DNA from: Octopus sinensis
Lineage: Eukaryota
Assembly (NCBI RefSeq): GCF_006345805.1
Contig: NC_043001.1
Location: forward strand, 107,384,001-107,448,000
Length of the DNA: 64,000 nt
Reading direction: 5' to 3'
Shown one piece after another: positions 3,785 to 47,409 of this stretch. The translations under genes were made by a program, and so were the position numbers. The notes under the pieces are model-generated. The model searched no databases. It was given only the letters and a program-made list of their open reading frames with translations, and had not been told where the DNA came from. How positions within the stretch are numbered: the first letter of the stretch is position 1; each line of letters opens with the position of its first letter.

Positions 3785-3903
<119 letters not shown>

Positions 3904-5073: not shown

Positions 5074-7579
5074 TTAATTACCAGGGATGGGAGCGATGAC
5101 CTCCCCTCATAAATACTAATCGGACTCAGAATATGTGTCATTAGCCAGCTGGAGGAGATGCCTTCCTGGAGTTATAAACATCAGTAGCACTGTCCCGTAT
5201 AGGACGCCAGACTTGTTTGGCAATTATATGTTACGATTCCGTATTGCTACTGTTTATACCTCGCTCAGAGATTTAATATAGCTTATACACACACACACGC
5301 ACACACACACATATATATATATAAATATATATAAATATTATTTGCATAAATAAAGATTATTTGGATATTCTCCGCATGCGTATACATGTCTACATGTGTG
5401 TAATTACATCTGACAGCAGACACAGTAATATATTTTTATCCTTTAGCGCACTGTTTAAACCTGGCTAATATATGCACACAACAGTAAACAAAATGGCGAG
5501 GAGATTTGGATCGAGTGTTTAGAGTCTCTTGTGTCGGCTGCTTGTTTCGTGCATGTCTATATACGCGTAGATATATATATATATATATATATATAAGTTC
5601 AGCAAAATTTAGATTCAGATGAATATGGTATTAAGTTAAAGGCACCAGAATTTTGTATGGTATTATCCATATAAATCAAATGGGGTGATTATAATCAAAA
5701 TAAGCAACAAGGATGTCCAAAGTAGTGTAGTACAATTGTTTCATGCTACTTCATTTTATTAAACACTGTAAGTATTACATCAGTTTTAAAATGTCGAGCA
5801 ATCGATATATATATATATATATGTGTATGTGTGTGTGTGTGTGTGTGTGTGATTGTATTTCTTTGAATGTATAGATAGTACTTTTGGCAATCACCTTCTA
5901 GTATATATTTTAGCTATTGTACTTCTAGGACTGTAAATTTTGACATTTTTTAAAACCAGTTGTGTGAGATTCATGTTATTCGGTTGCAATTTCTAGCAGA
6001 TCAAATGATCCCCACAAAGGCTCTCATGTTAGCTTTGTATTAACTTTATCAACAAACCTATCATGAAACTAATTAAGCTGAGTGATGTCATTGGTGGAGC
6101 AGGAACTAAATATTGATCACAGAATAAATCAACCATGTAGGACAGTTACACTGTTGTATTGCACGTTCGACGTACGATATAACGGGATAACGATAACGTC
6201 CTCACATATCGTTCTACTCAAGATACGGATAATAACCCTCGAAAATACGCAACTCACGGTTTACTCTGTTCTCAAGGCTGTCTGTGTATGTCCATTTATA
6301 TTGTGGCACAGAGGCGGCGAACTGGCAGAAACGTTAGCGCGCTGGGCGAAATGCTTAGCGGCATTTCGTCTGCCGTTACGTTCTGAGTTCAAATTCCGCC
6401 CAGGTCGACTTTGCCTTTCATCCTTTCGGGGTCGATAAATAAAGTACCAGTTTCGTACTGGGGTCGATGTAATCGACTTAATCCGTTTGTCTGTCTTTGT
6501 TTAGCCCCTTTGTGGGTAGTAAAGAAATATATATTGTAGCATAGTCCATTAGGGGCCAGCCAAAAGGGGTGTTCTACTTCCACACAACATATACAATGGT
6601 TGAGAACAAAAATGAAGTGTTTAAAGAATAATAATGATTCAGAGTCGCCTAACATAATGTAAATTATCATAGGAGCGCTAAAACTTAACTAAAACTATTC
6701 ATTCATTGAGGAAAAAAATATTATGTTACTAATAGCCTTTTAATTTGTTCGTTAAGAAAGTCACCTTCAGACATGTTCTGTTTTTTTCTCTTTTTCTTTA
6801 TGTCCTTTTGAGCAAAGCATAAGGACACACTACACTTGACTAGAGAATCAGTCGTAAGGAATACGTGCATTACTACGAACTGACTGTAACCGTAAAATAG
6901 AATACTTCAGAGAAGTCTGCATGGAAAATTAATGTAAATGAAAATTAATGTAAATAATCCAAGGAGCCTTTATGAATCTAACCCAAAAATAATCATACCA
7001 TACAGTAAAAAAATAAAAACAAAAAAATAAATAAATAAAAAAGCAAATTAGTTTGGCAAGTACGGGAGACAACTCCTGATATGTTTCAATCTTCTTATAA
7101 TCTCTACAGCGAAGCCATGGGCTTTAACATGACGATGTAGTTGTGGAGGAATCGTTCGTAACGATTTGTAGTCAACGTTTTAATGTTTAAATTAAACAAT
7201 TAAGGTTTCATGATAACATTAAAAATATTTACATTGAACCAACTACAGTAATTCCTGCCGATGGCGCCTCTAATTTATGTCGGACATATATTTCATGATT
7301 GTTAGTGGCTTGGACTCGTTATTTTCTATAGACGCTGCGAGTGATTGTGGTGTTGGTCTTAAAATAGTTAGGATTAGGAGCAATAATGGAAAAGTCCATC
7401 GTGACAACGGTGGCAACGAGAGCAATAACTATGGTTACTGTAGCGACACAAGTTCTGATGGTTCAGGCGAAGGCGGTAGTGGTCGTATAAATAATGTCGT
7501 CATGTTAACTCTAAGTGGCTCACAGAGCATTCAGCAGGGCAGGTCGGTCGATGTTAATCATAGTAACAGTAGCCATCAT

Positions 7580-7651: not shown

Positions 7652-7847
7652 TAATAATAATAATAGTAGTAGTAGTAGTAGCAGTAGTAGTCGTACAGAC
7701 AGCAGCAGCGGTATTACCGGTGGTGGTGGTAGTAGTAGCAGGTGGTCGTGATGATGGTGGTAGTTTTCACAATAAGCATGTATGTGGCTCTGTTCCTTTA
7801 GATCTGATCGATTGTATTTTTTTTCTATTTCAACAGAACAATTAAAA

Positions 7848-7917
7848 ATGAAGGCCGTAATACTATGCCTGGCTATTATGCTCTCTTACGCTCTACTGGC
7901 AGTAGCAAACAACGACA
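7848..7917 (+). CDS. Coding exon 1 of a small secreted/GPI-anchored mucin-like protein: signal peptide MKAVILCLAIMLSYALLAVA-NND
   Basis: Acceptor ttttttttctatttcaacAG ends at 7836, followed by an 11-nt UTR and ATG at 7848 in A-rich context (aaaaATG). Encodes K plus a hydrophobic core and an A-V-A cleavage motif. Ends with donor A|GTAAGT at 7918 (phase 1). Confidence 0.88.
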
Positions 7918-7987
7918 GTAAGTAGTTTCTCTCTTAATAAAGAAATAAGTAAGTAGTTTCTCTCCACATTACATACATACGTACATA

Positions 7988-8023
<36 letters not shown>

Positions 8024-8242
8024 TTCTTTTATTCTTTAATTCTTTTACTTGTTTCAGTTGAGTGATGCCATGCTGGAGCACCGTCTCGAAGGATTCTCAG
8101 CCGAATGGATCGAACCCATTATTTTTTTGTAAATCCTAGTACATATTCTATCGGTCCATTTTGCCGAACTGCTATGTTACGGGGACGTAAACACACCAAC
8201 ACCGGTTGTCAAGCAGTGATGTGAGGATAAACAGACACAAAG

Positions 8243-8282
<40 letters not shown>

Positions 8283-9294
8283 GACGGGGGTTCTTTCAGC
8301 TTCTGTCTACCAAAACCCTTCACAAAGCTATAGTAGAAGACACTTGCCCAAGGTGCCACACAGTGGGACTGAACCAAGAACCATGTGGTTGGGAAGCAAG
8401 CTTCTTACTACACAGCCACTCCTATACATACATACATACATACATACATACATACATACATACATACATACATACATGCATACATGCATACATACTACGT
8501 CTGTCCACCAAATCCACTCACAAGATTTTGATCGGCCTGGGGCTATAATATAAGACACTTGAACGAGATACCACACATCTTGTTTGGGGGTAGACATCAG
8601 AGATAAGTGAAATGAAATCGATATTCTCTATGCATGATGGGAAATAATTGTGAACAGGCCGCTGATTGAAGTTGAAAGAATGGGAAAAAGTGAAACAGGA
8701 TTCAGGAAGAGGGTTTCAGGGCCATGCGAACCGGATCATGAAGCATCAGATTTCGTTGCAGAATTTGTGCAATGCACAGGTATCTGTAGGATAACAAGGA
8801 AGTTTCTCAAAGAAGGAAAACAAAAATTGCTTTGTATTTATATCATATATAATCGTAGAAAATCACAGATGTCGGGATGAAACATCATACTATCTTCTTT
8901 AGGGTCAAAATTCAAACTATATGCTGAAGTTTCCTTGTGTTTCTTCTTCATCCTTGGAAATCTCTTGGAAGTGTTTTCTTTTTTGCGATATATGGATGAT
9001 GCAAAATTCTAGCATAACTTTAGACCATGACAGAACATCAAAACCTCCAAGTATATAATGCTATTACTCCCTACAGTAAGCATACTACCATAACAGTATA
9101 CAACGTTATCGTTATTTAGAACTGTGCTGTTCTGTAATGACGTTTATTTACAGTCATGTGTACTACATTCTGTTGATTAAATGGACAGGTTGTAGTAGCA
9201 TTGACAAATAATGAACAATCGATTCCTCAGTAGATTGTCAGTTTTATCCATTTTCCAAGTTTCGATATACAACCGCATTAAAGTTATTATTTAT

Positions 9295-10230
9295 ATTATG
9301 ATGGAACGGGAAGTCATGTTGCAATTTTAGATGCGACTGAAACAATTGCTTCTTCGCTCCTACTTGGTATATTTAATCAAGATAATATTTCCAATCATTA
9401 TTGATCACATGATACCTTATATCTGGCTAATTGTTGATCACTCGACCATAAAATTCTTCAGGTTTCGAAACTAATAAAAGCCTCGGTATCACTCTTGAGC
9501 TCTTTACGAGTAATAAACACTTTTCCTTCTAAATAATGTTGCAATGATCTGGAAATATGGTTATCACACGAAGTTAGATCAGGAGAATAAGGAAGATGAA
9601 GCAAGGATGGCATATTTAGTGTAATAATAGTCTTTTCCCAAGTGACTTGGACAATAAGTGGTCTGCATTATGATTTACCAATGGCGGCCCTTTTCCTGTA
9701 AGTTTTTGAGCAATGTATCAAATGATAATATTATAGCTCGGCAATAACAGTTTCGTCTTGATTGAACACTTCATGATAGGCAATACCTTCATTTCTCACT
9801 AAACTCAGAGCGTAACATTTTCGGGTGCAATCTTGGCTTGGGATGGATTACCTCTTTTCGTTGGGTATTTCTTTACTACCCACAAGGAGCTAAACACAGG
9901 AGAAACAAGGACAGATAAACAGATTGTTCTTGTTGGATATGGTTATAGAGAAGGCCCTTTTCATCACTTGTGATTATTCAAGACAACGATGCAAAGCAGA
10001 GGTCAACTCTCTAATTAAGCTGAGAAGCAGCCAGCGGATGAAGAGCCCACTAGCCAAGTTTAGACACTTTTCCTACTGTTTTTTTTTTACCTAAGTGTGG
10101 CTTGAATTGTTTCTAATTCTCGTGAAGTTTGCTTTGAATTTTCTTCAACTGTGGTTTTCAGAATGTCAGTATTGACAGAACTTGTTTGTCCAAATTGAGG
10201 GAACTGTGCGGCAGAAAATCTAGTCAAATC
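9295..10230 (-). mobile_element. Degenerate mariner (DD34D-type) transposase remnant in the first coding intron of the 74-aa gene
   Basis: Minus-strand frames give GQTSSVNTDILKTTVEENSKQTSRELE, GKVSKLG*WALHPL (WVPHEL-like), ITSDEKGLLYN and LHLPYSPDLTSCDNHISRSLQHYLEGK (YSPDL); multiple stops/frameshifts; SINE fragment inserted at about 9860-9925. Confidence 0.85.
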
Positions 10231-11049
10231 CCCGTTGGCATATCCGGACACTTAAAGGTTGATTTCTATAGACAAATGAATATTCTTTGCCGTTTCTATT
10301 GCTAAAAAGACCATTTTGAATGCATGCAGCATGCGATGCCTGATATGGGCCTGATTTAAACCCGCTTCAAAAGGATAAAATCGATACAAACTTAACTACT
10401 ATAGTATAAAGTAATCTGTAAAGAAAGAGAAAAGCATTGAAATATAACACTTAATGCTAGTTTTACCGTAAAAAGTACCGTCAAAGGGATCATGTCAAAA
10501 ATGTGACAAGCCTTTCTTTCCAACTTAATACATATTTTTAACGGTGGTATTGGATAATGTTAATTAATTGTGGTAGGCATACTTTAAAGAAAAAACGGAG
10601 AAGGAATGGCTTCAGTCTAGATCCAAAGTTGAACTGACTACATAAGGAAACGCATTTCCCGACTATGTTGTTTTTGTTACCGTTGGATAGCCCAGTGTAA
10701 AGCTGACTGAATAGGCATATCATCAAAGGTATTTCAGCTATAACAGTCACATATTTCTAGGGTTATGCAGATCAACATTATCCGATGTATCCTTCTCATA
10801 ATTGTGGTGGGTATATCATTTGATGAACATTTGTCTGCTGTTTCGTTAGAAGTCAGTCAACAAATCTCCGGCTCAATCATTAGCCCGATTAAAGTAAATA
10901 TGCATACAGCAATATATCAAATTGTTTCTGTTTAAAAAAAGTCGTGATATTTGTAAAATAAAATTCATTGCCAAATATTGTAATATTCAAAAATAAATGA
11001 TATATTTTTAAAAATGCTAACATTGGGTCTCACTTCTATACTTTTCCAG

Positions 11050-11144
11050 CTACAGCCGACACGACAATATCTCCGAATGTTACAGAAGCAGAAGCGGCGA
11101 ACGTAACCACATCAAAGCCAGAAACCACCACTTCAGGATATTCG
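11050..11144 (+). CDS. Coding exon 2: (T)TADTTISPNVTEAEAANVTTSKPETTTSGYS, S/T-rich ectodomain
   Basis: Acceptor ttctatacttttccAG ends at 11049; donor G|GTATGT at 11145. The 95-nt exon accepts phase 1 from exon 1 and ends in phase 0, open only as a Thr-rich peptide with two NVT sequons. Confidence 0.88.
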
Positions 11145-11359
11145 GTATGTTTGTATTATATAAAAAGTCGAAGGAGAAATAGAATTCCCTTTATTTTTGT
11201 TTCTATAATTTGTTCCCCAGAAAGGTGGAGAGCTAGCAGAGTGGTTAACATGCCGGACACAATTCTTAGCGGCATTTCGTCCGTCTTTTCATTGTGAGTC
11301 TGTTATGTCCTTATGGATAAGCGAATGCACTGCAACAGTGTAATAACAATATAATCGAG

Positions 11360-11945
11360 GGCGGCGAGCTGGCAGAATCGTTAGCACGCCGGGTGGAATG
11401 CTTAGCCGTATTTCGTCTGTCGTTACGTTCTGAGTTCAAATTCTGCCGAGGTCGACTTTGCCTTTCATCCTTTCGGGGTCGATTAAATACGTACCAGTTA
11501 AACACTGGGGTCGATATAATCGACTTAATCCGTCTGTATGTCCTTGTTTGTCTCCTCTGTGTTTAGCAACTTGTGGGTAATAAAGAAATAGGAATTTCGT
11601 TTGCCGCTACGTTCTGAGTTCAAATTCCACCGCGGTCGACTTTGCCTTTCATCCTTTCGGGTTCGATTAAACAAGTACCAGTTACGCACTGGGGTTGATT
11701 TAATCGACTTAATCCGTTTGTCTGTCCTTGTTTCTCCTCTCTGTGTTTAGCTCCTTGTGGGTAGTAAAGAAATAGAAATAGGTATTTCGTCTGTCTTTAT
11801 GTTCTTAGTTCAAATTCCGCCGAGGTCGACTTTGCCTTTCATCCTTTCGGGGTCGATAAATTAAGTACCAGTTGCCTATTGGGGTCGATCTAATCGACTG
11901 TCCTCCTCCCCCCAAATTTCGGACCTTGTGCCTGGAGCAGAAAAG
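11360..11945 (+). mobile_element. tRNA-derived SINE family A, tandem multimer (intronic)
   Basis: GGCGGCGAGCTGGCAGAA..GAGTTCAAATTC head plus repeated units of about 190 nt. Other copies at about 6313-6530, 16187-16410, 21930-22130, 25195-25400(-), 38590-39115(-), 40625-41205(-), 43465-43735(-), 45048-45380(-), 47964-48380, 53450-53625. Confidence 0.9.
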
Positions 11946-12103
11946 AATTTAGCCATTATTTAGCTATTATAGTGGCGCAAGTATGCAAATAGCTAATCTA
12001 CATAGTTTGATTATGTATAGAAAAATACTGAGTTATTTTTTCCTTTAATTGAATATTATATTATAGATAATTATATAATTGCTTATTTCTCTTTCTTTTG
12101 CAG

Positions 12104-12163
12104 ATTGTTTTACCTTCAGTTATGTTTGTCGGAGCAGCGAATATATTACAGCGATTTATCTGA
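12104..12163 (+). CDS. Coding exon 3: IVLPSVMFVGAANILQRFI-stop, GPI-signal-like hydrophobic tail
   Basis: Strong acceptor ttatttctctttcttttgcAG ends at 12103; phase 0 matches exon 2; TGA at 12161-12163; AT-rich 3' UTR with AATAAA at 12229-12234. Confidence 0.85.
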   Translation: MVLPSVMFVGAANILQRFI

Positions 12164-12228
12164 ATGATTATTTTCAATCAATAATATTTCCACATAATTT
12201 TTTATATATAAAGTTTTGAAATAACATA

Positions 12229-12234
12229 AATAAA
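12229..12234 (+). promoter_or_regulatory. Candidate polyadenylation signal of the 74-aa gene
   Basis: AATAAA 65 nt after the stop codon; further AATAAA near 12483-12492. Confidence 0.45.
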
Positions 12235-13132
12235 TCCTTCGATAATTGTTTGACTAATATAAATCCGTCTTCATATGTTCAATGGTTATACTACAATCGA
12301 TGCCGAAAAATAAACTAACGATGAATAATGAAATTGAATTTGCTTTCGGGTTTGGAGGAGCCGAATATAAAAGTGAAAAACAAACAAAACAAAGAACAAA
12401 AACAAAAAAGAAAAAACGGTATATGAATCCAGACCCAGAATGAAGTAAAACCATCAGAAAATAATATAAGTGTAATTTGTTTAAATAAATAAATATCATT
12501 CCGACATAAAATTAAAATATTTATTTATTTATTTCTCGTCGATGGAGCTTGAGAGCAATCTTTTTTTCTTTTTTTTACCATGTGACTTTGAGTCTACTGG
12601 TCAAGGTATAAGATGCTCAAATTGCCTCTTCTTTCTCAGCATTCACCACGTTGATATATGATCAAAGGTAATCTATCAGTAGCCACGATATCGTCTATTT
12701 TTTAAAAATTCTGACATGGATTAAGAAATAAAATTAAGTATAAAATTTGTATCCTTCCGTTTCTATTTTAAGGCGATAGGATGTTATCTGTGAGAGATTT
12801 GGTTGTTATTTTTAGCAAGTCGAAAGATCATTTAGAAGCTGTCCTCTTAAAATTGTAGTAAAAGCTGTCAAAGTAACCCCTTTACAGTGCACGGTTCTGC
12901 TAGAATAACAACCAAATCTCTCAGATGATACCGTACTGTCTTACAAAAGAGGATTGCAGGATAATACAATTTTGTATGCAGTATGTTTGAAAAAAATGGG
13001 AGGGATATGAAAAGAGAGGTGGCTATTGATTAAAGGCTTGCTTGATCCTAGATTTGTTCAATTTGGAATACTATGGTTCAGTGCAACGGTAGAAGTCAAG
13101 CAGCTTACTCCTCTTAGGAATAGCAAATTCCG

Positions 13133-13294: not shown

Positions 13295-13666
13295 TTACAC
13301 GAAGCTTAACTGATATTGGTGTTGTGATCGAATGTGACTTTTTAGCCCAGCTAAAGATCTACAATGTCTTGTGCAGAATTGGCAGCTAAAAACTTTACCG
13401 GCAATAGCCGGCTGTAGTTGTAACTGGGCTTCATGTACCTTTGCATGTCGTTTAAGTCCTCCTGCCGAATTACACTCTCTTCCACATGCCTGACAGATAT
13501 GATTAGTATGGTGTGTAACACCACCACTAGTGGCCAGGTTGTCACTCATCTGTCTCGTTTTATGACTACGAAGATGACTCTTAAGTCCAGCTTTACTGAG
13601 GCAGGGTCTTGCACACACACACTGCATGTCAGCATCATAGGAAGACCCTTCCCTAATGGAAGAGTA
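13295..13666 (-). mobile_element. RTE-type LINE 3' end encoding three C2H2 zinc fingers
   Basis: CVCARPCLSKAGLKSHLRSH, CQACGRECNSAGGLKRHAKVH, CQFCTRHCRSLAGLKSHIRSQH, stop, short tail ending ...gaagccatcat, flanked by (CATA)n. The CxxCxRxCxSxxGLxSH pattern is typical of RTE ORF C-termini. Confidence 0.7.
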
Positions 13667-14339
13667 ACATACATACATACATACATACATACATACATAC
13701 ATACATACATACATACATACATACATACATAACATACATGCATACATACATACATACATACATACATACATACATACATACATACACATACATACATACA
13801 TACATACATACATACATACATACATACATACTTACATACATATACACGTATATACATGAGAGAGCAATACCGACACGAGTTGGAGAAAGTCCCACCGACC
13901 TGATCTTATCAGTGATCAACGAAATTGCGAGATAACAAGTAGCTCAAATCCAAATTCCTAACTTTCGGACAACAATGTCCTGCTATATTGTGCCGCAGTA
14001 ACTGTGCACCAACAGCTGGGAGTAAGAGAGACCGATCCGAACGATAACACAGAGCCAAAAATGGATTTTTTTTTTTCCATCAATGGACTCAGGGAAAAAG
14101 ATAAGTCAGTTGGACTCTATCATCAAAATTCGAGGCTAAATATGAGTTCACGAATCACCAGCTAAGACTGCATGATAGGTTCTCCAAGTTGTATGAGTAA
14201 TGCCGCCGAGAAACAACCACAGAAAAACGTATCGGTCTCAAATATGATCTATGTGCAGTAAGTAAATAACTTGGTTATTGTAAAAAAAAATTACATGAAC
14301 GGAAAATGATAAAATGACAGTTTGCTTGAAATTCACAAG

Positions 14340-16680
14340 CAGTATATTACAGTTATTATGAAACTCCCGAATGGAAAATCATCAGGGAGAGGCCTGATAG
14401 TAGGTTACTGGTACACAAACCTCACGTTCTTCAGGGAAACTCTCATGAACATGTTTAAAATGTAATGGACACTGAGCTAGATATACGAGATTGGCTGACG
14501 TTTGCACGGGCTACTCTTATCCCCACCCTCCCAAAAAACAAAGAAACCCATGTGACCAAAAACTATAGGCTCATAGCATAACAAGATATTAAGACTACAT
14601 ACTGCGGCAGAAAAGAATAAAATTAATGTCACCCACAAATGTTTGTTTTGTTTGCTGACCTGTACACAGGCTGCCTGAATATGTATATGAATATGACCTT
14701 AAGTATACCAATCAATATCACCGTAATATCTTAACGGTATGGCTAGCCTAAAAGAAGGCGTTCGACTCTATGCTTCACTCGTGGGTGGTAGAATCATTAC
14801 GCTTTGCCAAAGTACCAGCTGTTATTGTGAATGGCATTGAAAGATTGACCACAACCTGGTCCACACAGTTATCAGTGACAACTGCTAATGCAACACCAAC
14901 TGTCATGAACACAATTAAGTTATCAATAGGCATATTCCAGGCCGATAGTTTATCTGCAATGTTGTTTGTAGTAACAGTGAATCTTTTGTCAGCCCTTTTA
15001 ACAAGATGCCAACACTACATGCTTGGATATGCAGGAAAGAATAAAATTAATGTCACCCACACATTTTTGTTGAAGACCTAAAGTTATATTCTAGTAATAT
15101 GAATAAACTGGAGGGATAATTGGAACTAGTTACAATATTCTCACGAGATATAGGAATAGAGTTTGAGTAAGATGAATGCTCATATATGATAGACAACCGA
15201 GGAAAGATTCTCGATCAAGCAAAGAACATGTGCATCAACGGCTTGTCTGTCTCCCCTATCTCTAATGATGGAAGTTACAAGCACCTCGGAATCAATGAGA
15301 ATGTTGCATACGTTGGTACTGTGACTAAAGCCCGAATAACAAAAAGAATACTTCTGTAAACTCTGGAAAATATGGAACTCAGAGCTGTCTGCATTTAATA
15401 AGATCGTACACCACAATTCTTCTGCAGTACCAGTTCTAGTACCAACATTTTAATTATTGGACTAGACACTCAATGAAATACGCAGTCTGGACATAAAAAC
15501 CAGAAACGAACTGACCAACACTGGCAACTTCCACATTAACTGTGACACCGACAGGAGAAAAAGTGATGGCGGTTGAGGCATAAGGCCAGTCCAAACAGCA
15601 TTTGAATGTCATATTGTACCAGTCAGAGCTGCTGGACAGTAATGAAAGAAATGAGTACATTCCATAAATACTCAAAATGGAGATCAAAAACGTCTTCAGA
15701 GTTGAAGAACTACTGTGCAGGCACTCTGAGGATACATGTCTCATACGCCCCAAATGAGGCTGGACTCGCCTATCTAAAGAGAAGCTTGGAGGAGATGTTG
15801 GTATCATACCAACAAAAAGCAATGCATGGGTACATACCCCGTAAACTAAAGGGCCACAGCAGCATTGACAGAAAAAGTCGATTCTCCTGGACCTGCGATA
15901 GATACATTACATTCTATCTCGAAGAATATGTCTTCACTATCCAGGAACAGGAGATAGGTCCTAAATACCTGAGGGACAAAGATATCCCCAAACCTTCACG
16001 CTATGATAAAAATGTCGACTCTGCTATATCAACGTGGAAGATACCAACCACATTATCAGCAGCTGCTTTAAAACGTCTACGAGATGCTACCTGCTCCTGA
16101 GGCATGACGTAATTGCAATAACTATTTACAATGCTCTGATGTATGCATCAAATACATGTCAGAAGCAACAGGTATTCATTCTTTAAGGCGGCGAGCTGGC
16201 AGAAACGTTAGTGCGCCGGGCGAAATGCTGCGCGGTATTTCATCTGAGTTCTGAGTTCAAATTCTGCCAAGGTCGACTTTGCCTTTCATTCTATCGGGGT
16301 CGATTAAATAAGTACTAGTTACGCACTGGGGTCGATGTAACCGACTTAATCCGTTTGTCTGTCCTTGTTTGTCTCCTCCATGTTTAGCCTCTTGTGGGCA
16401 TTAAAGAAATAGGTATTCATTCTTTTAAAAACAAGGAATACTGGTGGAATACCCCAATAAAATATCAATTCGGTGCAAAGATGATAGACCTGATATTATT
16501 CTGTAGGACAGGAACAAAAGTTGTGCACTGCTGTAGATGTCAGCGGTCCAGTGGATGTGAATTTATAATTATAAGTCCAGAGGATGTTTATGGCGAATTA
16601 GTGGGCAACTTACAGCTCTTGTACTCTATGAATTCTCATTTGTTATTATCATCAGCGGTGCATTAGGTTATATACCAACT
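14340..16680 (+). mobile_element. Degenerate RLE-type (R4/Dong-like) non-LTR retrotransposon
   Basis: RT motifs SIGIFQADSLSAMLF and YKHLGI, HINCDTDR; C-terminal RHDVIA and EYWWNTPI..RPDII; many frameshifts; SINE inserted at 16187-16410. Confidence 0.85.
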
Positions 16681-17190: not shown

Positions 17191-17909
17191 AACATAATTG
17201 AACAAAAATCTAAATTCAAAAGATATTTCTTTCATAATCTTCATTTTGTCTATGCCTAAGACTGTACGCATTGAACGGCCGAATGATTAAGAAGTTCGTA
17301 CGCAACTCAAGGCAACGTTGTTCGATTTCACTGCGCGATATTCTTCGATAAATGTAATTTTTTTTAGGCTACAATTCGATCATTGTGTGTAAAGATGTAT
17401 ATACGGAAGCTGTATAGAAAGAAACTCGTCCGATGGGTTGTGCCTTGTCACACTTTATGTCACTCTATGTCACACTATGTCACACTGTATGTCACACTGT
17501 ATGTGTGGAGGTACATGGCCTAGTGGTTAGAGCAGCTGACTCGCGGTCGAGGGATCGCGGGTTCGAATCTCAGACCGTGCGATGTGTGTGTTTATGAGCG
17601 AAATACCTAAGCTCCATGCGGCTCCGGCAGAAGGTAATGGTGAACTTCTGCTGACTCTTTCGCCACAACTTTCTCTCACTCTTTCCTCCTGCATCTTGCA
17701 GCTCATCTGCGACGGACTGGCGTCCCATCCACGTGGGGAACATATACGCCAAGGAAACCGGGAAACCGGCCCTTATGAGCCAGGCATGGCTTGAGAAGGA
17801 ACAAACAAAAAAAGCAAAAACAAAAAAAAAAACAAACACTATGTCACATTTTTTCTCAGAATATTTTGCACAATAATTTTTAAAGAAATCTGGACAACTT
17901 TCTTATTGC

Positions 17910-18380
17910 TAACCATTCAACTTGCTGCTACCCGCATGGTTCATGGTCTCAAAAATTTGTCTTATGAAGAAAGGCTGAAGACGCTCGACCTTTATTCTCT
18001 AGAAAAACGCCGCCGCCGTGGTGATCTGATTCTCGCTCACAACATCGTAAGCGGAAAGTGTAACCTCTCGAAAGAGCTGTTCTTCACTCCTGCTCCAGAG
18101 CGTCGGCTGCGGGGTCATTCCGAAAAGCTCTACCTGCGACGATTTCATCTCAATCGAAGGAGAGGAGCTTTCGCCGTCCGGGTTGCGGATCCGTGGAACA
18201 AGCTGCCGGACGAGATGGTGAAGATGCCGACGACCGCTTTGTTCAAAGTCTCCCTTGACCTCAAGTGGCCTGAACTCTTTACATGAACACCACCCTGTAC
18301 TTAACTCCATGTCCCCCTACATGGCCTTGCTATTTGCTTTTGAGCCAAATTAACTAACTAACTAACTAACTAACTAACTT
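17910..18380 (+). mobile_element. Young CR1-like LINE 3' end with (TAAC)n tail
   Basis: Uninterrupted LSYEERLKTLDLYSLEKRRRRGDLI...LRGHSEKL...FAVRVADPWNKLP...FKVSLD to a stop at 18286, short 3' UTR, tandem TAAC tail at about 18350-18379. Confidence 0.92.
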
Positions 18381-19420: not shown

Positions 19421-20276
19421 CGTTGTCTGATCAATAGGTATCCAGTCTGTTGTCATAGTAACGAAGCTAGAGCACGCAGAGTAAAACCGCTTCGCACAGA
19501 TTGACCTTAAACTTTGATGTGCAGGCTCACTAAGTTTTAATGTTCTGGCTCAAATCCGCATTTTACAGCAGTGCTTTGAAGGAAGGTGCGTAGCGTGTGA
19601 TCGTCGCACCGAAAATGACAGAGAAAGTTGAGCAGAGAGTCTGCATCAAATTTTGCCAAAAGTTTGGTTATACCTGTTCAGAAGCCTACGCAAATTTTCA
19701 AAAGGTTTTCATCATTCTCAACACAATCAAGGACATCTTGTGCAACTGAAACCCAATTGTCTTTTTGGTCAGCTGAAAGCAATTTTGACACAAACTTGGC
19801 AGACAGGCATCTCATATACAAATCTTTAGTGATAATGGACTGAAATGTAACTAATCTGCACGTTTTCTGATAACTCACGGATGGTGATTCTACGATTTCC
19901 TCTCACAGCTGCACGCACATCTCCGATGTTTTTCTCAGTTCTGCTGGTTGCTGGTCTCCCAGAAAGTTCGTCAATATCGACATTTTTTCGGCCATCTTGG
20001 AAACGTGAGAACCACTCGTAGACTTTCTGCAACTTTGCGTAGGCCTCTGAGTCGGTTTCGCCATGACAAATATCTTTGTCATGGTCAATGCAACGATCAC
20101 ACGCTATACAACTTCCTTCCAAGCACTGCTGTAGACAGCGGAGGTGAGCCAGATCGTTAAAACGTATTGCGCATGCACAGTAGAGTTCAAGGTCAATCTT
20201 TGCAAAGCGGCTCTATTCTGCGTACTTTAGCTTCGTTATTATGGCAACAGTATGGTAACTTATTGATCAGACCGCA
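19421..20276. mobile_element. Mariner-derived element made of two inverted 5' ends
   Basis: Ends gtctgatcaatag / tattgatcagac with TA after the right end. Left arm encodes MTEKVEQRVCIKFCQKFG (+); right arm encodes VYEWFSRFQDGR..SGRPATSRT..NRRITIREL..AKFVSKLL (-). Confidence 0.85.
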
Positions 20277-20599: not shown

Positions 20600-21070
20600 C
20601 GACCAGAGATTGGTCCAGGCCATGTCTAACTTAATAGCACCACCTGATAGGATTATTCGAATCCTGTTTAAGTCAAGTTTTGTTCAAGTAGTGAGTTCTT
20701 GTTGGGTGAGTTGTATCCAGTTTTGTTCAAGTAGTGAGTTCTTGTTGGGTGAGTTGTATCCAATTATGGGTGGCTTATCTGGTATTCTTTGAAGGAATCT
20801 ATCCAGACTCTGTTTAAAGTTGATGGGATCCTTTTCCTCTTTGATCTCCCTCGGGACAATGTTAAATAGGGCAGGGCCTGTTGAGGAAAAGAAATTATGT
20901 TGCAGTGTACATGTATGTTGTGATCTTGAATTTGGCAGTGGACGTATAGCTCGTGGTCCAAGTCTTGGATGAACCTTGAAGCTAATGTTTAGGTCGTTTG
21001 GGCAAAGTTGGCGGTATATTTTCCACATCGTACAAATGATGTACCGCTCACGGCGACGCTGGAGGGAGTA
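20600..21070 (-). mobile_element. CR1-like LINE 3' fragment
   Basis: YSLQRRRERYIICTMWK...GPALFNIVP...FKQSLDRFLQRIPDKP...NSLLE; includes a tandem duplication of about 40 bp near 20680-20760. Confidence 0.85.
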
Positions 21071-21689
21071 ATATATATATATATAACTTACGCACACATA
21101 GACTTTTATGCGCGTGCGAGGGATTTTGTGTGTATAAAAAGAGCCTTATAGTAAAACTGGAGAACTCCCCTCGACGAATCGACTGCAGAGAAACAATCTT
21201 ACGCACACGCGCACAGACAAAGCAGAAGAGTAGCTTACATATGTAAAAAATGCAAATGAGTTAAAAGTGCTACATTTGCTCATTTGCATATCAACACACT
21301 CGTTGACAGCCACTATTAATCAACTAAAATATTGAAACAATGCGTGTGTGTGAGTGTGAATATTTTGTAAATATACATACATTTCCCCGTCACTTAGCGG
21401 TTCGGCAAAAAGAGCTCGATAGGATAAGTACTGGGCTTACAAAGAATAAGTCTCGGGGTCGATTTCCTCGACTAAAGGCGGTGCTCCAGCATGGCCGCGG
21501 TCAAATGACTGAAACAAGTAAAAGAGTAAAAGAGTAAAAGAGTAAAAGAGTATACATGCTTATTTCTTATTTCGTTCCCTAAACATAAATTCAACTGAGT
21601 TGAGTAAATCAACCCCGTAGTTAAACCAAATGATTTTCTCTGCAGAATGAACTACAGAAAAACTTGTCTAATTTCAACGACTCATTACA

Positions 21690-21910: not shown

Positions 21911-22139
21911 CATCTTTATCTGTAAAGCGGCAACCTGGCAGAAATGTTAGCACGCCGGGCGAAATGCGTAGCCGTATTTCGTCTGCTGTTATGTTCTGAG
22001 TTCAAATTTCGCCGAGGTCGACTTTGCTTTTCATCCTTTCGGGGTCGATAAATTAAGTACCAGTTACACACTGGGGTCGATGTAATCGACTTAATACCTA
22101 TGTCTGTCCTTGTTTGTCCCCTCTATGTTTTTTTTCTGA

Positions 22140-28469: not shown

Positions 28470-29450
28470 GTATGATATGCCCTCAACTGCCTGGATAACC
28501 ACCTTTGCTAGCTACGCAGACAAGAAAGTCTCACAGAAAATACAGATATCGCACGTCTGCAGCAGGAGTTGGACTCAATTTACAGATGGGCTGAGGATAA
28601 TAATATGCAGTTTAATGCTGAAAAATTCCAAGCCCTGTGCTATCAGCGTCCAAAACTGAATATGAAACTTACAAAGTAGACAGGTCCACAGGGAATTACA
28701 ATCCCAGAGCCTAAATAAGGGAGGGTTCTGGGTATCGACATGAGTGATGTTACCTCTTTGCAAGTGGACATTACCAGGATGGCGACAAGGTGCAGACGAC
28801 TGGCTGGCTGGATCTTTAGAACATTCAGAACTAGAGGAAAGGAAACCATGATGGTCCTCTGAAGGACATTCGTCCTCAGACTGGATTACTGCTCCCAGCT
28901 ATGGTCACTCAGCAGTTTAAAATTAACAGCGCACCTTGACGCAATCCAACACGGTTCACAAAGAAGACCGTCTCATTGCAACATCTCAGCTACTGGGAAA
29001 GGCTGAAACAGCTAAGACTCTACTCCCTGGAGCGAAGGTGGAGGAGATATGCAGTAATATACATCTGGAAGATCCTGGAAGGAATTGTGCCAAATTTTGG
29101 CATTGAAAGCCACACCAATGCCAGAACGGGTCGACACTGCACAGTACCAAAGATCCTAGCAATGCCATCGCCCTTCAAGACCAGTTACTGCAACAGCCTG
29201 GGTTTCAAGGGCCCAAAGCTTTTAAATATTCTCCCAAAGAGCACGCGGAACCTACACAAAATGGGTGTAGGTGTTTTAAAATCAAAACTAGACCTCTTCC
29301 TGTCGAGAGTCCCAGATGAACCTACCTCACGGCAAGAGGTGCAAACGAGTAGCGATATCAAAATCCATTCTTCACCAAGTCCCACATATTAGAGGAAGCT
29401 CTTAGTAGTAACAGCGTAGCAAAACGGCGGTGCCCCAGCATGGCCACACC
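28470..29450 (+). mobile_element. CR1-like LINE 3' part
   Basis: SYAD..WAEDNNMQFNAEKFQ; DYCSQLWS; LSYWERLKQLRLYSLERR; GPKLLNILP..LDLFLSRVPDEP. Confidence 0.88.
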
Positions 29451-29894: not shown

Positions 29895-29991
29895 GAGAGA
29901 GAGAGAAAGAAAAAGGTTGTTAGAGTGGCAACAGTTGCCGCCGCCACTGGACTAGCAGCAGCAGCAGTTGCAGTAGTAGTAGTAGTAGTAA

Positions 29992-30045
<54 letters not shown>

Positions 30046-30185
30046 ATAATTTGAAACGCTGATAAGAATGAAGTTGTAATAATACATAAGGGAAGGGGTG
30101 GATAGGGGGAAGAATGAGGGGGAAAAAGGTGGAGGAGTAGAGGGAGTGGATGTGGAGAAGGATGTATAAAGGAAGGGGAGGATGT

Positions 30186-30216
<31 letters not shown>

Positions 30217-31395
30217 GTATACTTTAAGAGACTTACTATTGTTTCTGCCCCCAAAAGATTTGTTATTGAACGGGGTCATTTTTGTTGCTAGGTGACACCA
30301 CTAACATCACCACCAGCACCACCAGCACCACCACCACCACCACCACTATCGTCATCATCATCATCATCATCTCCACCATTCACAACTGTCGCACAACAGC
30401 AGCAGCAGTAGCAGCAGTAGCAGCCGTAGCAGCAGCAGCACTGTAAACAACAAATTAAAGGGCAGTGATTAATCCTAATTTCCAGCATTGCTATATGGCC
30501 AGGCTGGAGCAAGAGAATCGATCGCAACTACTTGATTGCAACTTAATGTTATCGAACCCTTGAAAGTATAAAATGTACAATTAACGGTACAGAATTTTGT
30601 AATTGTGAAGGCGCGCAGCATGTGGTAAGAAGCTCGCTTCCCAATCGCATGGTTCCGAGTTCAGTCCCACTGGATGACGCCTTTGGCTAGTGTCTTCTAC
30701 AATAGCCCCTGAAAGAAGCCTATCGTTTAATACTTTTCTCGTTGTATTACGTGTTCATTTCTTTATTGTATCTCTTTACTTTTTTACTCTTTTACTTATT
30801 TCAGTCATGTGACTGTGACCATGCTGGAGCACCGCCTTTAGTCGAGCAAATCGACCCCAGGACTTATTCTCTGTAAGCCTATAACTTATTCTAGCGACCC
30901 CCTTTGCCGAACCGCTAAGTTACGGGGACGTAAACACACCAGCATCGATTGTCAAGTGATGTTGGGGGGGGGACCAACACATCGCTTGACAACCGATGCG
31001 GGTGCGTTTACGTCCCCTTAACTTAACGGTTCGGCAAAAGACCCCGATAGAATAAGTACTAGGCTTACAAAGAATAAGTCCTGGGGTCGATTTGCTCGAC
31101 TAAAGGCGGCGCTCCAGCATGGTCACAGTCACATGACTGAAATAAGTAAAAGAGTAAAAGAGTTAATGGTAGCATTAATTTATTTCCCAGCGTTCTCACT
31201 GTTGTACCACCCGACATACGCTTAACGGCAACGGTGACTAAATTGGTCTAAGTATATACAATTTGTAAATGGAGTCAGTTCCCGGTTTTTGAAAGAGAGA
31301 GAGAGAGAGAAAGAAAAAGGTTGTTAGAGTGGCAACAGTTGCCGCCGCCACTGGACTAGCAGCAGCAGCAGTTGCAGTAGTAGTAGTAGTAGTAA

Positions 31396-31455
<60 letters not shown>

Positions 31456-31595
31456 ATAATTTGAAACGCTGATAAGAATGAAGTTGTAATAATACATAAG
31501 GGAAGGGGTGGATAGGGGGAAGAATGAGGGGGAAAAAGGTGGAGGAGTAGAGGGAGTGGATGTGGAGAAGGATGTATAAAGGAAGGGGAGGATGT

Positions 31596-31626
<31 letters not shown>

Positions 31627-32740
31627 GTATACTTTAAGAGACTTACTATTGTTTCTGCCCCCAAAAGATTTGTTATTGAACGGGGTCATTTTTGTTGCTA
31701 GGTGACACCACTAACATCACCACCAGCACCACCAGCACCACCAGCACCACCACCACCACCACTATCGTCATCATCATCATCATCATCATCTCCACCATTC
31801 ACAACTGTCGCACAGCAGTAGCAGCAGTAGCAGCAGTAGCAGCAGTAGCAGCCGTAGCAGCAGCAGCACTGTAAACAACAAATTAAAGGGCAGTGATTAA
31901 TCCTAATTTCCAGCATTGCTATATGGCCAGGCTGGAGCAAGAGAATCGATCGCAACTACTTGATTGCAACTTAATGTTATCGAACCCTTGAAAGTATAAA
32001 ATGTACAATTAACGGTACAGAATTTTGTAATTGTGAAGGCGCGCAGCATGTGGTAAGAAGCTCGCTTCCCAATCGCATGGTTCCGAGTTCAGTCCCACTG
32101 GATGACGCCTTTGGCTAGTGTCTTCTACAATAGCCCCTGAAAGAAGCCTATCGTTTAATACTTTTCTCGTTGTATTACGTGTTCATTTCTTATTGTATCT
32201 CTTTACTTTTTTACTCTTTTACTTATTTCAGTCATGTGACTGTGACCATGCTGGAGCACCGCCTTTAGTCGAGCAAATCGACCCCAGGACTTATTCTCTG
32301 TAAGCCTATAACTTATTCTAGCGACCCCCTTTGCCGAACCGCTAAGTTACGGGGACGTAAACACACCAGCATCGATTGTCAAGTGATGTTGGGGGGGGGA
32401 CCAACACATCGCTTGACAACCGATGCGGGTGCGTTTACGTCCCCTTAACTTAACGGTTCGGCAAAAGACCCCGATAGAATAAGTACTAGGCTTACAAAGA
32501 ATAAGTCCTGGGGTCGATTTGCTCGACTAAAGGCGGCGCTCCAGCATGGTCACAGTCACATGACTGAAATAAGTAAAAGAGTAAAAGAGTTAATGGTAGC
32601 ATTAATTTATTTCCCAGCGTTCTCACTGTTGTACCACCCGACATACGCTTAACGGCAACGGTGACTAAATTGGTCTAAGTATATACAATTTGTAAATGGA
32701 GTCAGTTCCCGGTTTTTGAAAGAGAGAGAGAGAGAGAGAT
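29895..32740. repeat. Tandem duplication with a unit of about 1.4 kb
   Basis: aaaaggttgttagagtggc at 29911 and 31315; unique sequence essentially identical, only microsatellite lengths differ; junctions lie in (GA)n. Confidence 0.95.
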
Positions 32741-44549: not shown

Positions 44550-44955
44550 CTATTGTTAAGTTCTGATCTTAGTGGATCTTAAAATATCTTTTGAGGTCTC
44601 CGTTAGACTTGCAGACCTTATGGGATATGCGGCACTGATGGGCATGCACAGATATAAAGGTAGAATAGTTGGTGGAGGTTATGTATATATCCCCATACAA
44701 AACAAAACTTCTCGAAAATCGAATGACCCCAGTGGTCATTCATTAAAAGAATTAAGGGCATGACTGTTCTCGATTATTGGGACCGCCTTAAAGCATTGAA
44801 ACTCTATTCTCTCCAGCGCTGCCGTGAGCGATACATCTTGTGCACGATGTGGAGAATATACCGCCAGCATTTCCCAAACGACTTTAGCATTAACTTTAAA
44901 ATTCATCCAAGGATAGGGCCACGGGCCATACGACCCCTACCCAATTCTGGATCAA
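44550..44955 (+). mobile_element. CR1-like LINE fragment (same family as 20600-21070)
   Basis: LDYWDRLKALKLYSLQRCRERYILCTMW...HPRIGPRAIRPLPNS. Confidence 0.85.
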
Positions 44956-44981
44956 AACTACTGTTACTACTATTACTACAG

Positions 44982-45030
<49 letters not shown>

Positions 45031-46961: not shown

Positions 46962-47243
46962 TAATAATAATAATAATAATAATAAAAACAGAAACAATTC
47001 CTATCATAGTAGGTGCATTAGGCATGATAAAAAAATATTCAGACAAATACATAACAAAAACACCAGGACTTACAAACACATATAACATACAGAAAATTGC
47101 ACTACTAGGCACTGCACACATCCTACGCAGAACACTTTCCATACAATAACCATCAGATCATCACAACAAATCACAGCACATACCCAAGGCACACAGAGCT
47201 GCGCTCGGTAGTGAAGTGAAATCACGCTATAAAAATAAAACTA

Positions 47244-47300
<57 letters not shown>
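46930..47300 (+). mobile_element. RLE-type LINE 3' end with (TAA)n tail
   Basis: TETIPIIVGALGMIKK...IQKIALLGTAHILRRTLSIQ*, 3' UTR and (TAA)n. Confidence 0.88.
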
Positions 47301-47302
<2 letters not shown>

Positions 47303-47409
47303 ATAAAAAAAGAAAGAATATGTATGATAATCGACATAGCATGCCCCCGGTGAAAATAGGATCAATGTGAAAGAAGAAAAAATAAAAAAAACAACTATGT
47401 CAATTTAAA

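What the first reader, a model, noticed from the sequence alone, without database searches (positions are those of the whole stretch)
7837..12240. Hidden 74-aa CD24/CD52-like GPI-anchored glycopeptide gene
Seen: three short exons with canonical splice sites and matching phases (1, 0) join to MKAVILCLAIMLSYALLAVA|NNDTTADTTISPNVTEAEAANVTTSKPETTTSGYSIVLPSVMFVGAANILQRFI. After predicted signal cleavage (A20) and GPI addition near T51-G53, the mature chain is about 32 aa with 13 Ser/Thr, three N-glycan sequons (N22-D-T, created only by the exon 1/2 splice; N33-V-T; N41-V-T) and no Cys. Established: that layout is the architecture of vertebrate CD24 and CD52, tiny glycan-dominated GPI surface antigens. 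Inference: a cephalopod analogue, probably convergent and too short for automatic annotation. An upstream non-coding exon must exist because an acceptor precedes the ATG; I could not locate it.
Basis: partly seen in the sequence, partly recalled or inferred. Interest (0 to 1): 0.8.

Follow-up and report, generated by a model that had tools for sequence, protein, structure and literature searches.

The report
Tiny octopus mucin-like surface peptide gene
The three short exons are really there, and two of them belong to an annotated but uncharacterised Octopus vulgaris gene, so this is probably a real octopus-only micro-gene for a small sugar-coated, lipid-anchored surface peptide whose exposed part changes unusually fast; its expression, its signal-peptide exon and its anchor remain unproven.

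Summary
Exons 7848-7917, 11050-11144 and 12104-12163 (+), with GT/AG sites and phases 1 and 0, give the quoted 74-aa ORF.

It is not fully "hidden". Exons 2 and 3 form the 3' part of an annotated O. vulgaris gene (CAI9723384.1, 75 aa, "hypothetical predicted protein"), with the same junction, frame and stop.

Exon 1 is identical in O. vulgaris. It has top-1% acceptor and top-3% donor scores. It is the only SP-like ATG exon outside microsatellite repeats in 128 kb. It is an 81-nt in-frame cassette relative to the annotated model.

Against a 0.70% background, exon 2 carries 8 substitutions in 55 nt, all nonsynonymous (Bonferroni-corrected P about 1e-4). Both sequences have three N-glycan sequons, with one lost and one gained.

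No homologue was found in 1.84 billion protein representatives. Pfam gave no CD24 or CD52 match.

The layout matches CD24 in size (SP 20, mature about 33, tail 21 aa). The GPI site is ambiguous, and neither exon-1 use nor translation has been shown.

Verdict: a probable lineage-restricted micro-gene, CD24-like by analogy only. Interest is moderate.

The parts
7837..7917 (+). Exon 1. An 81-nt cassette: 11 nt leader plus ATG (7848) plus 23 1/3 codons that encode the signal peptide MKAVILCLAIMLSYALLAVA|NND. Phase 1 at both ends.
   Evidence: Sequence read. Acceptor score is in the top 1.3% and donor score in the top 3.3%. It is 100% identical in O. vulgaris. It is the only SP-like ATG exon outside microsatellite repeats in 128 kb. 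It is in frame with upstream exons A and B of the O. vulgaris model. It is not part of the annotated O. vulgaris CDS.
7918..11049 (+). Intron 1 (3132 nt). Positions 7918-7948 are a 31-nt insertion that partly duplicates the donor region. The insertion is absent from O. vulgaris.
11050..11144 (+). Exon 2 (95 nt). It encodes the mucin-like mature region T24-S55.
   Evidence: Orthologous to the third coding exon of O. vulgaris CAI9723384.1, with the same boundaries and frame.
11052..11104 (+). Hypervariable segment of exon 2. It carries 8 point substitutions against O. vulgaris, all nonsynonymous (T25A, A26S, D27N, I30M, N33S, A37E, A39G, V42G).
   Evidence: The background rate is 0.70%. P(>=8 in 55 nt) is 5e-9, or about 1e-4 after correction for 19,213 window starts. 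dN here is about 27 times the background rate.
11145..12103 (+). Intron 2 (959 nt). It contains SINE-like copies at about 11360-11900.
12104..12163 (+). Coding part of exon 3. It encodes the hydrophobic C-terminal tail IVLPSVMFVGAANILQRFI and the TGA stop.
   Evidence: It is 100% identical to, and is the last coding exon of, the O. vulgaris model. The Kyte-Doolittle 19-mer mean is 1.61, which is marginal.
12164..12255 (+). Probable short 3' UTR with AATAAA at 12229-12234. The polyadenylation site is inferred, not observed.
   Evidence: AATAAA occurs 1.3 times per kb in this AT-rich window, so this is weak evidence.

Best explanation
This is a real micro-gene restricted to the octopus lineage. 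It has at least five exons: A and B upstream of the window, and exons 1, 2 and 3 inside it.

Shown: exons 2 and 3 are bona fide exons.

Inferred: exon 1 is an 81-nt in-frame cassette that supplies a well-placed AUG and a classical cleavable signal peptide. When exon 1 is included, the 74-aa prepropeptide is proposed to behave as follows.
1. It enters the ER and loses residues 1-20 after the A-V-A motif.
2. It is N-glycosylated at up to three sequons and O-glycosylated on its S/T clusters.
3. Its marginally hydrophobic C-terminal segment, which runs to the very C-terminus, is exchanged for a GPI anchor by GPI transamidase.

The product would be an acidic, cysteine-free glycopeptide of about 21-33 residues on the outer membrane leaflet. 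It would work like vertebrate CD24: a minimal protein stalk whose job is to display glycans for adhesion, anti-adhesion or lectin recognition.

The N-terminal half of the mature peptide is diverging about 27 times faster than the surrounding DNA, entirely by amino-acid changes. This suggests diversifying selection from a fast-evolving partner such as a pathogen, a gamete-recognition protein or a self/non-self system.
For: - Exact ORF and canonical splice sites.
- Exons 2 and 3, their junction, frame and stop are used by O. vulgaris CAI9723384.1/A0AA36AWK1. I rebuilt that protein exactly from exons A+B+2+3.
- That annotation was built from Iso-Seq and RNA-seq evidence, ab initio prediction and EVM/PASA (PMC10700109). 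An 11-nt microexon in the model argues for junction evidence; this is inference.
- Exon 1 is 100% conserved. Its acceptor is as strong as that of annotated exon 2 and its donor is GTAAGT.
- Exon 1 is the only SP-like ATG exon with a good donor outside microsatellite repeats in 128 kb. It lies 3.1 kb upstream of exon 2 in the matching phase.
- Exon 1 is 81 nt long and symmetric, so it is in frame with exons A and B. Its ATG has A at -3, while the exon-A ATG has T at -3.
- All exons are single-copy in 121 kb, so they are not repeats.
- Substitution cluster in exon 2: 8 in 55 nt against a 0.70% background, corrected P about 1e-4. For nonsynonymous changes over the whole CDS, P = 2.7e-5. All 8 are nonsynonymous in this frame, against 6 of 8 in each other frame.
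- Both sequences have three sequons, with N33 lost and N27 gained.
- The tail has marginal hydrophobicity (KD 1.61) and no cytoplasmic extension. Polar linker and omega candidates are present.
- Dimensions match CD24.
Against: - The only public model skips exon 1. No exon-1-containing protein, either the 74-aa or the 102-aa form, exists among 5.8 billion clustered sequences. The signal-peptide exon therefore has no transcript support here.
- No read-level RNA evidence could be examined.
- With 0.7% divergence, conservation of exons 1 and 3 carries no information (P of zero changes = 0.29).
- 8 of 8 nonsynonymous is only P = 0.08 on its own. The sequon count is not above shuffled expectation (P = 0.12-0.14).
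- The GPI pattern is imperfect. Omega at G53 or T51 leaves a 0-2 residue spacer, whereas PMC10491789 describes 8-12. Omega at N41 or T43 has a suboptimal omega or omega+2 residue.
- The tail contains P, N, Q and R.
- No orthologue outside the O. vulgaris/O. sinensis pair was found.
- A permissive chain search produces decoys.
Confidence: 0.42

Rival explanations
1. This is a non-coding or non-functional transcript. Exons 2 and 3, with upstream exons A and B, belong to a low-level or long non-coding RNA. The annotation pipeline gave it the longest available ORF. The 74-aa reading is a fortuitous ORF, and exon 2 is simply unconstrained or mutation-prone.
For: - The annotated product is a 75-aa 'hypothetical predicted protein' with no domain.
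- No homologue exists anywhere.
- There is no sign of purifying selection: all 8 changes are nonsynonymous and none is synonymous.
- The locus is embedded in TE- and microsatellite-rich DNA.
- Permissive scans produce decoy chains.
Against: - Lack of constraint cannot explain a rate about 27 times above the neighbouring introns.
- A coherent SP, mucin and hydrophobic C-terminus architecture split across three phase-matched exons with top-percentile splice sites is unlikely by chance.
- My rough post hoc estimate for exon 1 alone arising by chance is about 1e-3 to 4e-3. It comes from the candidate density and the acceptor density.
Confidence: 0.23
2. This is the same secreted-pathway gene but without a GPI anchor. 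The C-terminal segment acts as a weak type I transmembrane anchor with a 4-residue tail (QRFI). Alternatively the peptide is simply secreted or shed as a small mucin-like glycopeptide.
For: - The tail ends in Q-R-F-I, with a basic residue that fits the positive-inside rule.
- The 19-mer KD of 1.61 sits at the classical threshold for a membrane span.
- The hydrophilic spacer expected of GPI signals is missing if omega lies at 51-53.
- There is a weak, sub-threshold resemblance to secreted Drosophila New_glue proteins (14.5 bits against a cut-off of 31).
Against: - The hydrophobic run is short, about 15 residues, and is interrupted by P, S, G and N.
- There is no real cytoplasmic domain.
- According to Galian et al. 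2012, marginal hydrophobicity at the extreme C-terminus characterises GPI signals. That paper is listed in the references of PMC10491789 and PMC9520029, and I could not read it.
- CD24's own GPI signal is 21 aa, per PMC8347636, the same length as the segment after G53 here.
Confidence: 0.15
3. The annotated isoform that skips exon 1 is the real product. It would be a 75-aa protein without a signal peptide. It would be either cytosolic or tail-anchored by the C-terminal segment, so the sequons would be irrelevant. On this reading exon 1 is not used, or is used only rarely.
For: - This is the only product annotated in O. vulgaris.
- The C-terminal hydrophobic segment lies within the last 20 residues, as in tail-anchored proteins.
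- The ORF from the exon-A ATG is open through B, 2 and 3.
Against: - The exon-A ATG has a poor context (T at -3, C at +4), and its 25-aa N-terminus looks arbitrary.
- Exon 1 has all the hallmarks of a real exon.
- An S/T-rich, sequon-bearing, fast-evolving segment is typical of extracellular sequence rather than cytosolic sequence. This rests on general knowledge and inference.
Confidence: 0.15
4. This is pure chance or an artefact. On this reading none of the three segments is a functional exon, and the O. vulgaris model is a spurious prediction.
For: The O. vulgaris gene model is short and has no functional annotation, and I could not inspect the reads that support it.
Against: - A four-exon model spanning 36.8 kb with an 11-nt microexon is very unlikely without splice-junction evidence.
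- The splice sites fall in the top percentiles.
- Exon 2 coincides exactly with a significant substitution cluster.
Confidence: 0.05

Closest known systems
Octopus vulgaris CAI9723384.1 / UniProt A0AA36AWK1 ('Hypothetical predicted protein', 75 aa; OX597818.1:114367915-114404770)
   Same: It is the orthologous locus, with about 99.3% nucleotide identity at aligned bases. Its last 50 residues come from the same exons 2 and 3, with the same junction, frame and stop.
   Different: Its N-terminus (MRHTREVETSTRNPGKPPLPQQRFA) comes from exon A and the 11-nt microexon B, both upstream of the window. It skips the signal-peptide exon 1, which is nevertheless present and identical in that genome. Eight residues of the mature region differ.
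Vertebrate CD24 (heat-stable antigen), a small GPI-anchored sialomucin
   Same: - The architecture and dimensions match. CD24 has an 80-aa precursor with SP 1-26, a 33-residue heavily glycosylated mature peptide and a 21-residue GPI signal (PMC8347636).
- Here the figures are 74 aa, SP 1-20, about 33 residues and 21 residues.
- Both are S/T-rich and carry N-sequons.
   Different: - There is no sequence similarity. Pfam gave no hit at E<=10 and phmmer found nothing.
- The candidate has three coding exons here. CD24 has fewer, from my memory and not checked.
- GPI anchoring and glycosylation are untested here.
- The taxon differs, so any relationship is analogy or convergence, not family membership.
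Vertebrate CD52 (CAMPATH-1 antigen)
   Same: It has the same logic: signal peptide, very short glycosylated peptide and GPI signal. This is established knowledge recalled from memory.
   Different: The mature CD52 peptide is only about 12 residues with a single N-glycan, from memory. The candidate is closer in size to CD24. There is no sequence similarity.
Drosophila New_glue proteins (Pfam PF21827)
   Same: These are small secreted T/S-rich proteins with a signal peptide. This was the only Pfam model to give any signal (E = 0.031, 14.5 bits, residues 2-52).
   Different: The score is far below the gathering cut-off of 31 bits. The match is compositional, covering the signal peptide and the Thr-rich stretch. 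Glue proteins have no hydrophobic C-terminal anchor signal.

Membership tests
CD24 / CD52 protein families (homology) | Detectable sequence similarity to the family profile | tested here: not met
   hmmscan of the 74-aa product against Pfam-A at E<=10 returned only a sub-threshold New_glue match and no CD24 or CD52 model. phmmer of the orthologue against 1.84 billion representatives found no relative.
CD24-type small GPI-anchored sialomucin (architecture class) | N-terminal cleavable ER signal peptide | tested here: met
   This was a rule-based check only. It found an n-region of M-K, a 17-residue uncharged h-region (best KD 9-mer 3.42) and A-V-A at -3/-1 before N21. SignalP was not available. 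Use of exon 1 in mRNA is not shown.
CD24-type small GPI-anchored sialomucin (architecture class) | C-terminal GPI-attachment signal: small omega and omega+2 residues, a hydrophilic spacer, and a hydrophobic stretch that runs to the C-terminus | tested here: inconclusive
   The test used the pattern in PMC10491789. A polar linker is present, and the hydrophobic tail I56-I74 ends the protein with a KD of 1.61. Omega candidates G53 and T51 leave a 0-2 residue spacer, and N41 and T43 give a 10-12 residue spacer but suboptimal residues. NetGPI, PredGPI and big-PI were not available.
CD24-type small GPI-anchored sialomucin (architecture class) | Very short, Cys-free, S/T-rich mature chain with N-glycan sequons | tested here: met
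   Residues 21-53 are 33 aa with 13 S/T, 2 P, 5 acidic and 1 basic residue, no Cys and 3 sequons. The sequon count is not significantly above the shuffled expectation (P = 0.12).
CD24-type small GPI-anchored sialomucin (architecture class) | Actual glycosylation and PI-PLC-sensitive surface anchoring | not testable with these tools
   This needs expression of a tagged construct, followed by PNGase F and O-glycosidase shifts and PI-PLC release.
Expressed protein-coding gene | Spliced transcript containing all three exons | tested here: inconclusive
   Exons 2 and 3 are joined in the annotated O. vulgaris CDS. Exon 1 is absent from that model, and no exon-1-containing product is in the protein collection. 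I had no access to reads.
Expressed protein-coding gene | Open frame conserved in related species | tested here: inconclusive
   The frame is intact in O. vulgaris. However, divergence is only 0.7%, and that paper reports 1.22% heterozygosity for O. vulgaris itself. More distant octopod genomes could not be searched with these tools.
Tail-anchored membrane protein (for the annotated isoform that skips exon 1) | No signal peptide and a single hydrophobic segment within about 30 residues of the C-terminus | tested here: inconclusive
   P0001 has no N-terminal hydrophobic segment and carries the same C-terminal segment. The hydrophobicity is marginal, and the segment is interrupted by P, G and N.

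The most novel reading that the evidence does not exclude
This would be an octopus-specific, convergently evolved CD24-like GPI glycopeptide whose exposed half is under strong diversifying or balancing selection. Its 81-nt signal-peptide cassette exon would be alternatively included, switching the same tiny ORF between a glycosylated surface form and a non-secreted form that lacks the signal peptide.
Probability: 0.12. Interest if true: 0.55.

Novelty: new member of a known kind. Interest (0 to 1): 0.33.

Why it matters
If real, this would be an example of a micro-protein gene that standard pipelines only half capture. In O. vulgaris the model has the wrong or an alternative N-terminus, and no matching protein from the window's own record was listed.

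It would also be a convergent invertebrate counterpart of the vertebrate minimal glycan-carrier surface antigens. The fast, purely amino-acid-changing divergence of its exposed segment would make it a candidate for recognition functions in cephalopods, such as immunity, gamete recognition or cell-cell recognition, where few such molecules are known.

If it is only an incidental ORF in a weakly expressed transcript, it has no wider importance. Small orphan proteins with a signal peptide and S/T-rich sequence are common in animal genomes, so by itself the finding is not very surprising.

Tried and rejected
- Paralogues or repeat origin. tblastn and blastn of each exon against the window and the 57-kb O. 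vulgaris locus found only the orthologous copies. The remaining hits were Thr-rich microsatellite translations.
- Distant homologues. The word-indexed search found only P0001. Full phmmer with P0001 found only a 1677-aa bacterial repeat protein, P0002, which matches the T/S-rich part compositionally, so I rejected it.
I did not try it in the other tools with the same restriction.
- Pfam gave no CD24 or CD52 hit. New_glue was sub-threshold.
- Rfam gave nothing at gathering thresholds anywhere in the window.
- Literature. No paper links CD24, CD52, GPI and invertebrates. Nothing useful came up on octopus orphan secreted genes. The peptide strings occur in no paper. Galian et al. 2012 is not held.
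- The two other apparent 'substitution clusters' (11971-11989 and about 3835-3890) do not count as point-substitution clusters. The first is a block replacement within tandem repeats. The second lies at the end of an alignment block, and I did not inspect it.
- Exon 2 extended upstream instead of spliced. The in-frame upstream sequence does not encode the QRFA of the annotated protein, so I rejected this. The 11-nt microexon explains it exactly.
- CpG decay as the cause of the cluster. By my reading of the aligned sequence, only one or two of the eight changes fall at CpG sites and the change types are mixed, so I rejected this.

Full report
**1. What is in the sequence**

The window is octopus-type DNA. 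It is 37.6% G+C and packed with microsatellites, SINE-like copies and LINE-tail ORFs.

- Exon 1: the acceptor tttcaacag|AACAATTAAAA precedes the ATG at 7848. The exon ends GACA|gtaagt at 7917, in phase 1.
- Exon 2: it runs from ttttccag|CTACAG at 11050 to TATTCG|gtatgt at 11144, in phase 0.
- Exon 3: it starts at ttttgcag|ATTGTT at 12104 and reaches TGA at 12161-12163.
- An AATAAA lies 66 nt past the stop. This is weak evidence, because the motif occurs 1.3 times per kb here.

The joined 225-nt CDS gives the quoted 74-aa sequence.

**2. Independent evidence that these are exons**

A search of 5.8 billion clustered proteins returned one hit, a 75-aa "Hypothetical predicted protein [Octopus vulgaris]" (CAI9723384.1, A0AA36AWK1). 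Its last 50 residues correspond to exons 2 and 3.

Its gene spans 36.8 kb on chromosome OX597818.1 (locus L001). Window positions 1-22469 align with L001 36330-56856, and aligned bases differ at 0.74%.

I rebuilt the annotated protein exactly from four pieces.
- Exon A: L001 10001-10062, with donor CA|GTAAGT.
- Microexon B: 11 nt at L001 30999-31009, atag|ACAACGATTTG|gtaagt.
- Exon 2.
- Exon 3.

That annotation combined Iso-Seq and RNA-seq assemblies (PASA and TransDecoder), ab initio predictors and EVM (PMC10700109).

An 11-nt microexon is hard to obtain without junction reads. I therefore infer, but cannot show, that transcripts support the model.

**3. Exon 1, the weak point**

The O. vulgaris model skips exon 1. 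No protein containing it is in the collection. Exon 1 nevertheless looks like a real exon.
- It is identical in O. vulgaris, including both splice sites.
- Its acceptor scores as high as that of annotated exon 2, in the top 1.3% of AG sites. Its donor is GTAAGT, in the top 3.3% of GT sites.
- A strict rule-based scan of both strands found four SP-like ATG exons with a good donor. Three are microsatellite translations and the fourth is exon 1.
- It lies 3.1 kb upstream of exon 2 in the matching phase.
- It is 81 nt long with phase 1 at both ends, so inclusion or skipping preserves the frame.
- If it is included after exons A and B, the exon-A ORF reads through it (…QQRF-EQLK-MKAVIL…) to give 102 aa.
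- The exon-A ATG has T at -3 and the exon-1 ATG has A at -3. Leaky scanning to the signal-peptide ATG is therefore plausible, though this is inference.

From the candidate and acceptor densities, my rough post hoc estimate for such an exon arising by chance in the intron between B and exon 2 is about 1e-3 to 4e-3.

A deliberately permissive three-exon chain search does give two poor decoy loci in 128 kb. The architecture alone would therefore not be convincing.

**4. Evolutionary signal**

Over 19,213 aligned bases there are 142 substitutions. Leaving out exon 2, the background rate is 0.70%.

Exon 2 has eight substitutions within 55 nt (11052-11104). The binomial P is 5e-9, or about 1e-4 after correction for all window starts.

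Two other windows showed dense mismatches. One (11971-11989) is a block replacement in a tandem repeat. The other lies at the end of an alignment block, and I did not inspect it.

All eight changes are nonsynonymous in the proposed frame (T25A, A26S, D27N, I30M, N33S, A37E, A39G, V42G). In each of the other two frames, six of eight are nonsynonymous.
- On its own, 8 of 8 gives only P = 0.08.
- The nonsynonymous rate in this segment is about 27 times the neighbouring non-coding rate.
- For the whole CDS the excess has P = 2.7e-5.

The remaining 179 exon bases are unchanged: exon 1, the 3' third of exon 2 (TSKPETTTSGYS) and exon 3. At this divergence that carries no information (P = 0.29).

Both sequences have three sequons, with N33 lost and N27 gained. 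Three sequons is not more than the composition predicts (P = 0.12-0.14).

The paper reports 1.22% heterozygosity for O. vulgaris and a 2.5-Myr split from O. sinensis. The window may therefore be O. sinensis or another O. vulgaris haplotype. The cluster may accordingly be divergence or old polymorphism.

**5. What it most likely does**

The N-terminus obeys the classical signal-peptide rules: M-K, a 17-residue uncharged hydrophobic core and A-V-A|N.

The middle is acidic, Cys-free and S/T/P-rich.

The C-terminal 19 residues are marginally hydrophobic (KD 1.61), are interrupted by P, G and N, and end the protein. This is the character of GPI signals rather than of stable transmembrane helices.

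Measured against the published GPI pattern (PMC10491789), the omega site is ambiguous.
- G53 or T51 gives a 21-23 residue signal like CD24's, but almost no spacer.
- N41 or T43 gives a canonical 10-12 residue hydrophilic spacer. It would also place all eight variable residues in the mature peptide and the invariant part in the cleaved signal.

I therefore favour this mechanism: ER entry, N- and O-glycosylation, and GPI anchoring of a 21-33 residue glycopeptide that serves as a glycan display. Every step after "the ORF exists" is inferred.

**6. Comparison with known systems**

The dimensions match CD24: 80 aa, SP 26, mature 33, GPI signal 21 (PMC8347636).

There is no sequence similarity to CD24, CD52 or anything else. 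The candidate may work like CD24, but it is not a member of that family. The only Pfam signal, New_glue at 14.5 bits, is compositional.

**7. Verdict**

- This is probably a genuine, lineage-restricted micro-gene. It is partly annotated in O. vulgaris with a different N-terminus.
- The signal-peptide exon, translation, glycosylation and the GPI anchor all remain untested.
- Novelty: a new member of a known kind, the small mucin-like GPI or secreted peptides.
- Interest is moderate. It is raised somewhat by the sharply localised, purely amino-acid-changing divergence of the exposed segment.

Noticed in passing
window 7918-7948: A 31-nt insertion sits immediately after exon 1. It consists of a 17-nt duplication of the donor region AGTAAGTAGTTTCTCTC plus 14 nt of filler, and it is absent from O. 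vulgaris. It creates a second GTAAGT 31 nt downstream. Using that donor would run into an in-frame TAG.
   Followed up: partly
window 11050-11055: A NAGNAG-like second acceptor (ccag|CTACAG|) lies 6 nt inside exon 2. It is present only in the window sequence, because O. vulgaris has CTGCAT. Using it would delete two residues in frame and keep the N-D-T sequon.
   Followed up: no
window ~29950-32489: A tandem duplication with a period of about 1.41-1.43 kb and copies 98-100% identical. It includes long triplet microsatellites that translate as poly-L, poly-Y and poly-T ORFs.
   Followed up: partly
window 19425-20272: Inverted repeat arms of 206 nt (80% complementary) flank a 98-aa ORF at 19826-20122 (-) that has weak helix-turn-helix Pfam hits. 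This looks like a decayed DNA-transposon remnant.
   Followed up: partly
window 6312-6514, 11360-11900, 16180-16417, 21919-22130: Copies of one SINE-like family of about 200 nt, 83-91% similar to several copies in the O. vulgaris locus. Two or three adjacent copies sit inside intron 2 of the candidate gene.
   Followed up: no
window 13295-13825 (-): A 176-aa ORF with three C2H2 zinc-finger-like motifs (Pfam E-values down to 2.5e-6), fused to a (TACA/TGTA)n microsatellite translation. It is probably a TE or pseudogene fragment.
   Followed up: partly
window 17906-18286 (+), 28976-29392 (+), 44760-45047 (+), 20684-21097 (-): Recurrent ORFs that share the motif ...L(D/S)YWERLK.L.LYSLE.RR.R.... 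They look like C-terminal fragments of a retrotransposon ORF. None has a Pfam hit.
   Followed up: partly
L001 9601-9800 (O. vulgaris); window 47156-47331: A repeat family of about 200 nt ends roughly 200 nt upstream of the exon-A ATG of the O. vulgaris gene. It has another copy inside the window. It could be a TE-derived promoter for the upstream start, but this is speculative.
   Followed up: no
window 11971-11989: A block of about 20 nt is replaced relative to O. vulgaris, which has extra TTAGCCATTA-type tandem units there. In a plain alignment this looks like a substitution cluster.
   Followed up: yes
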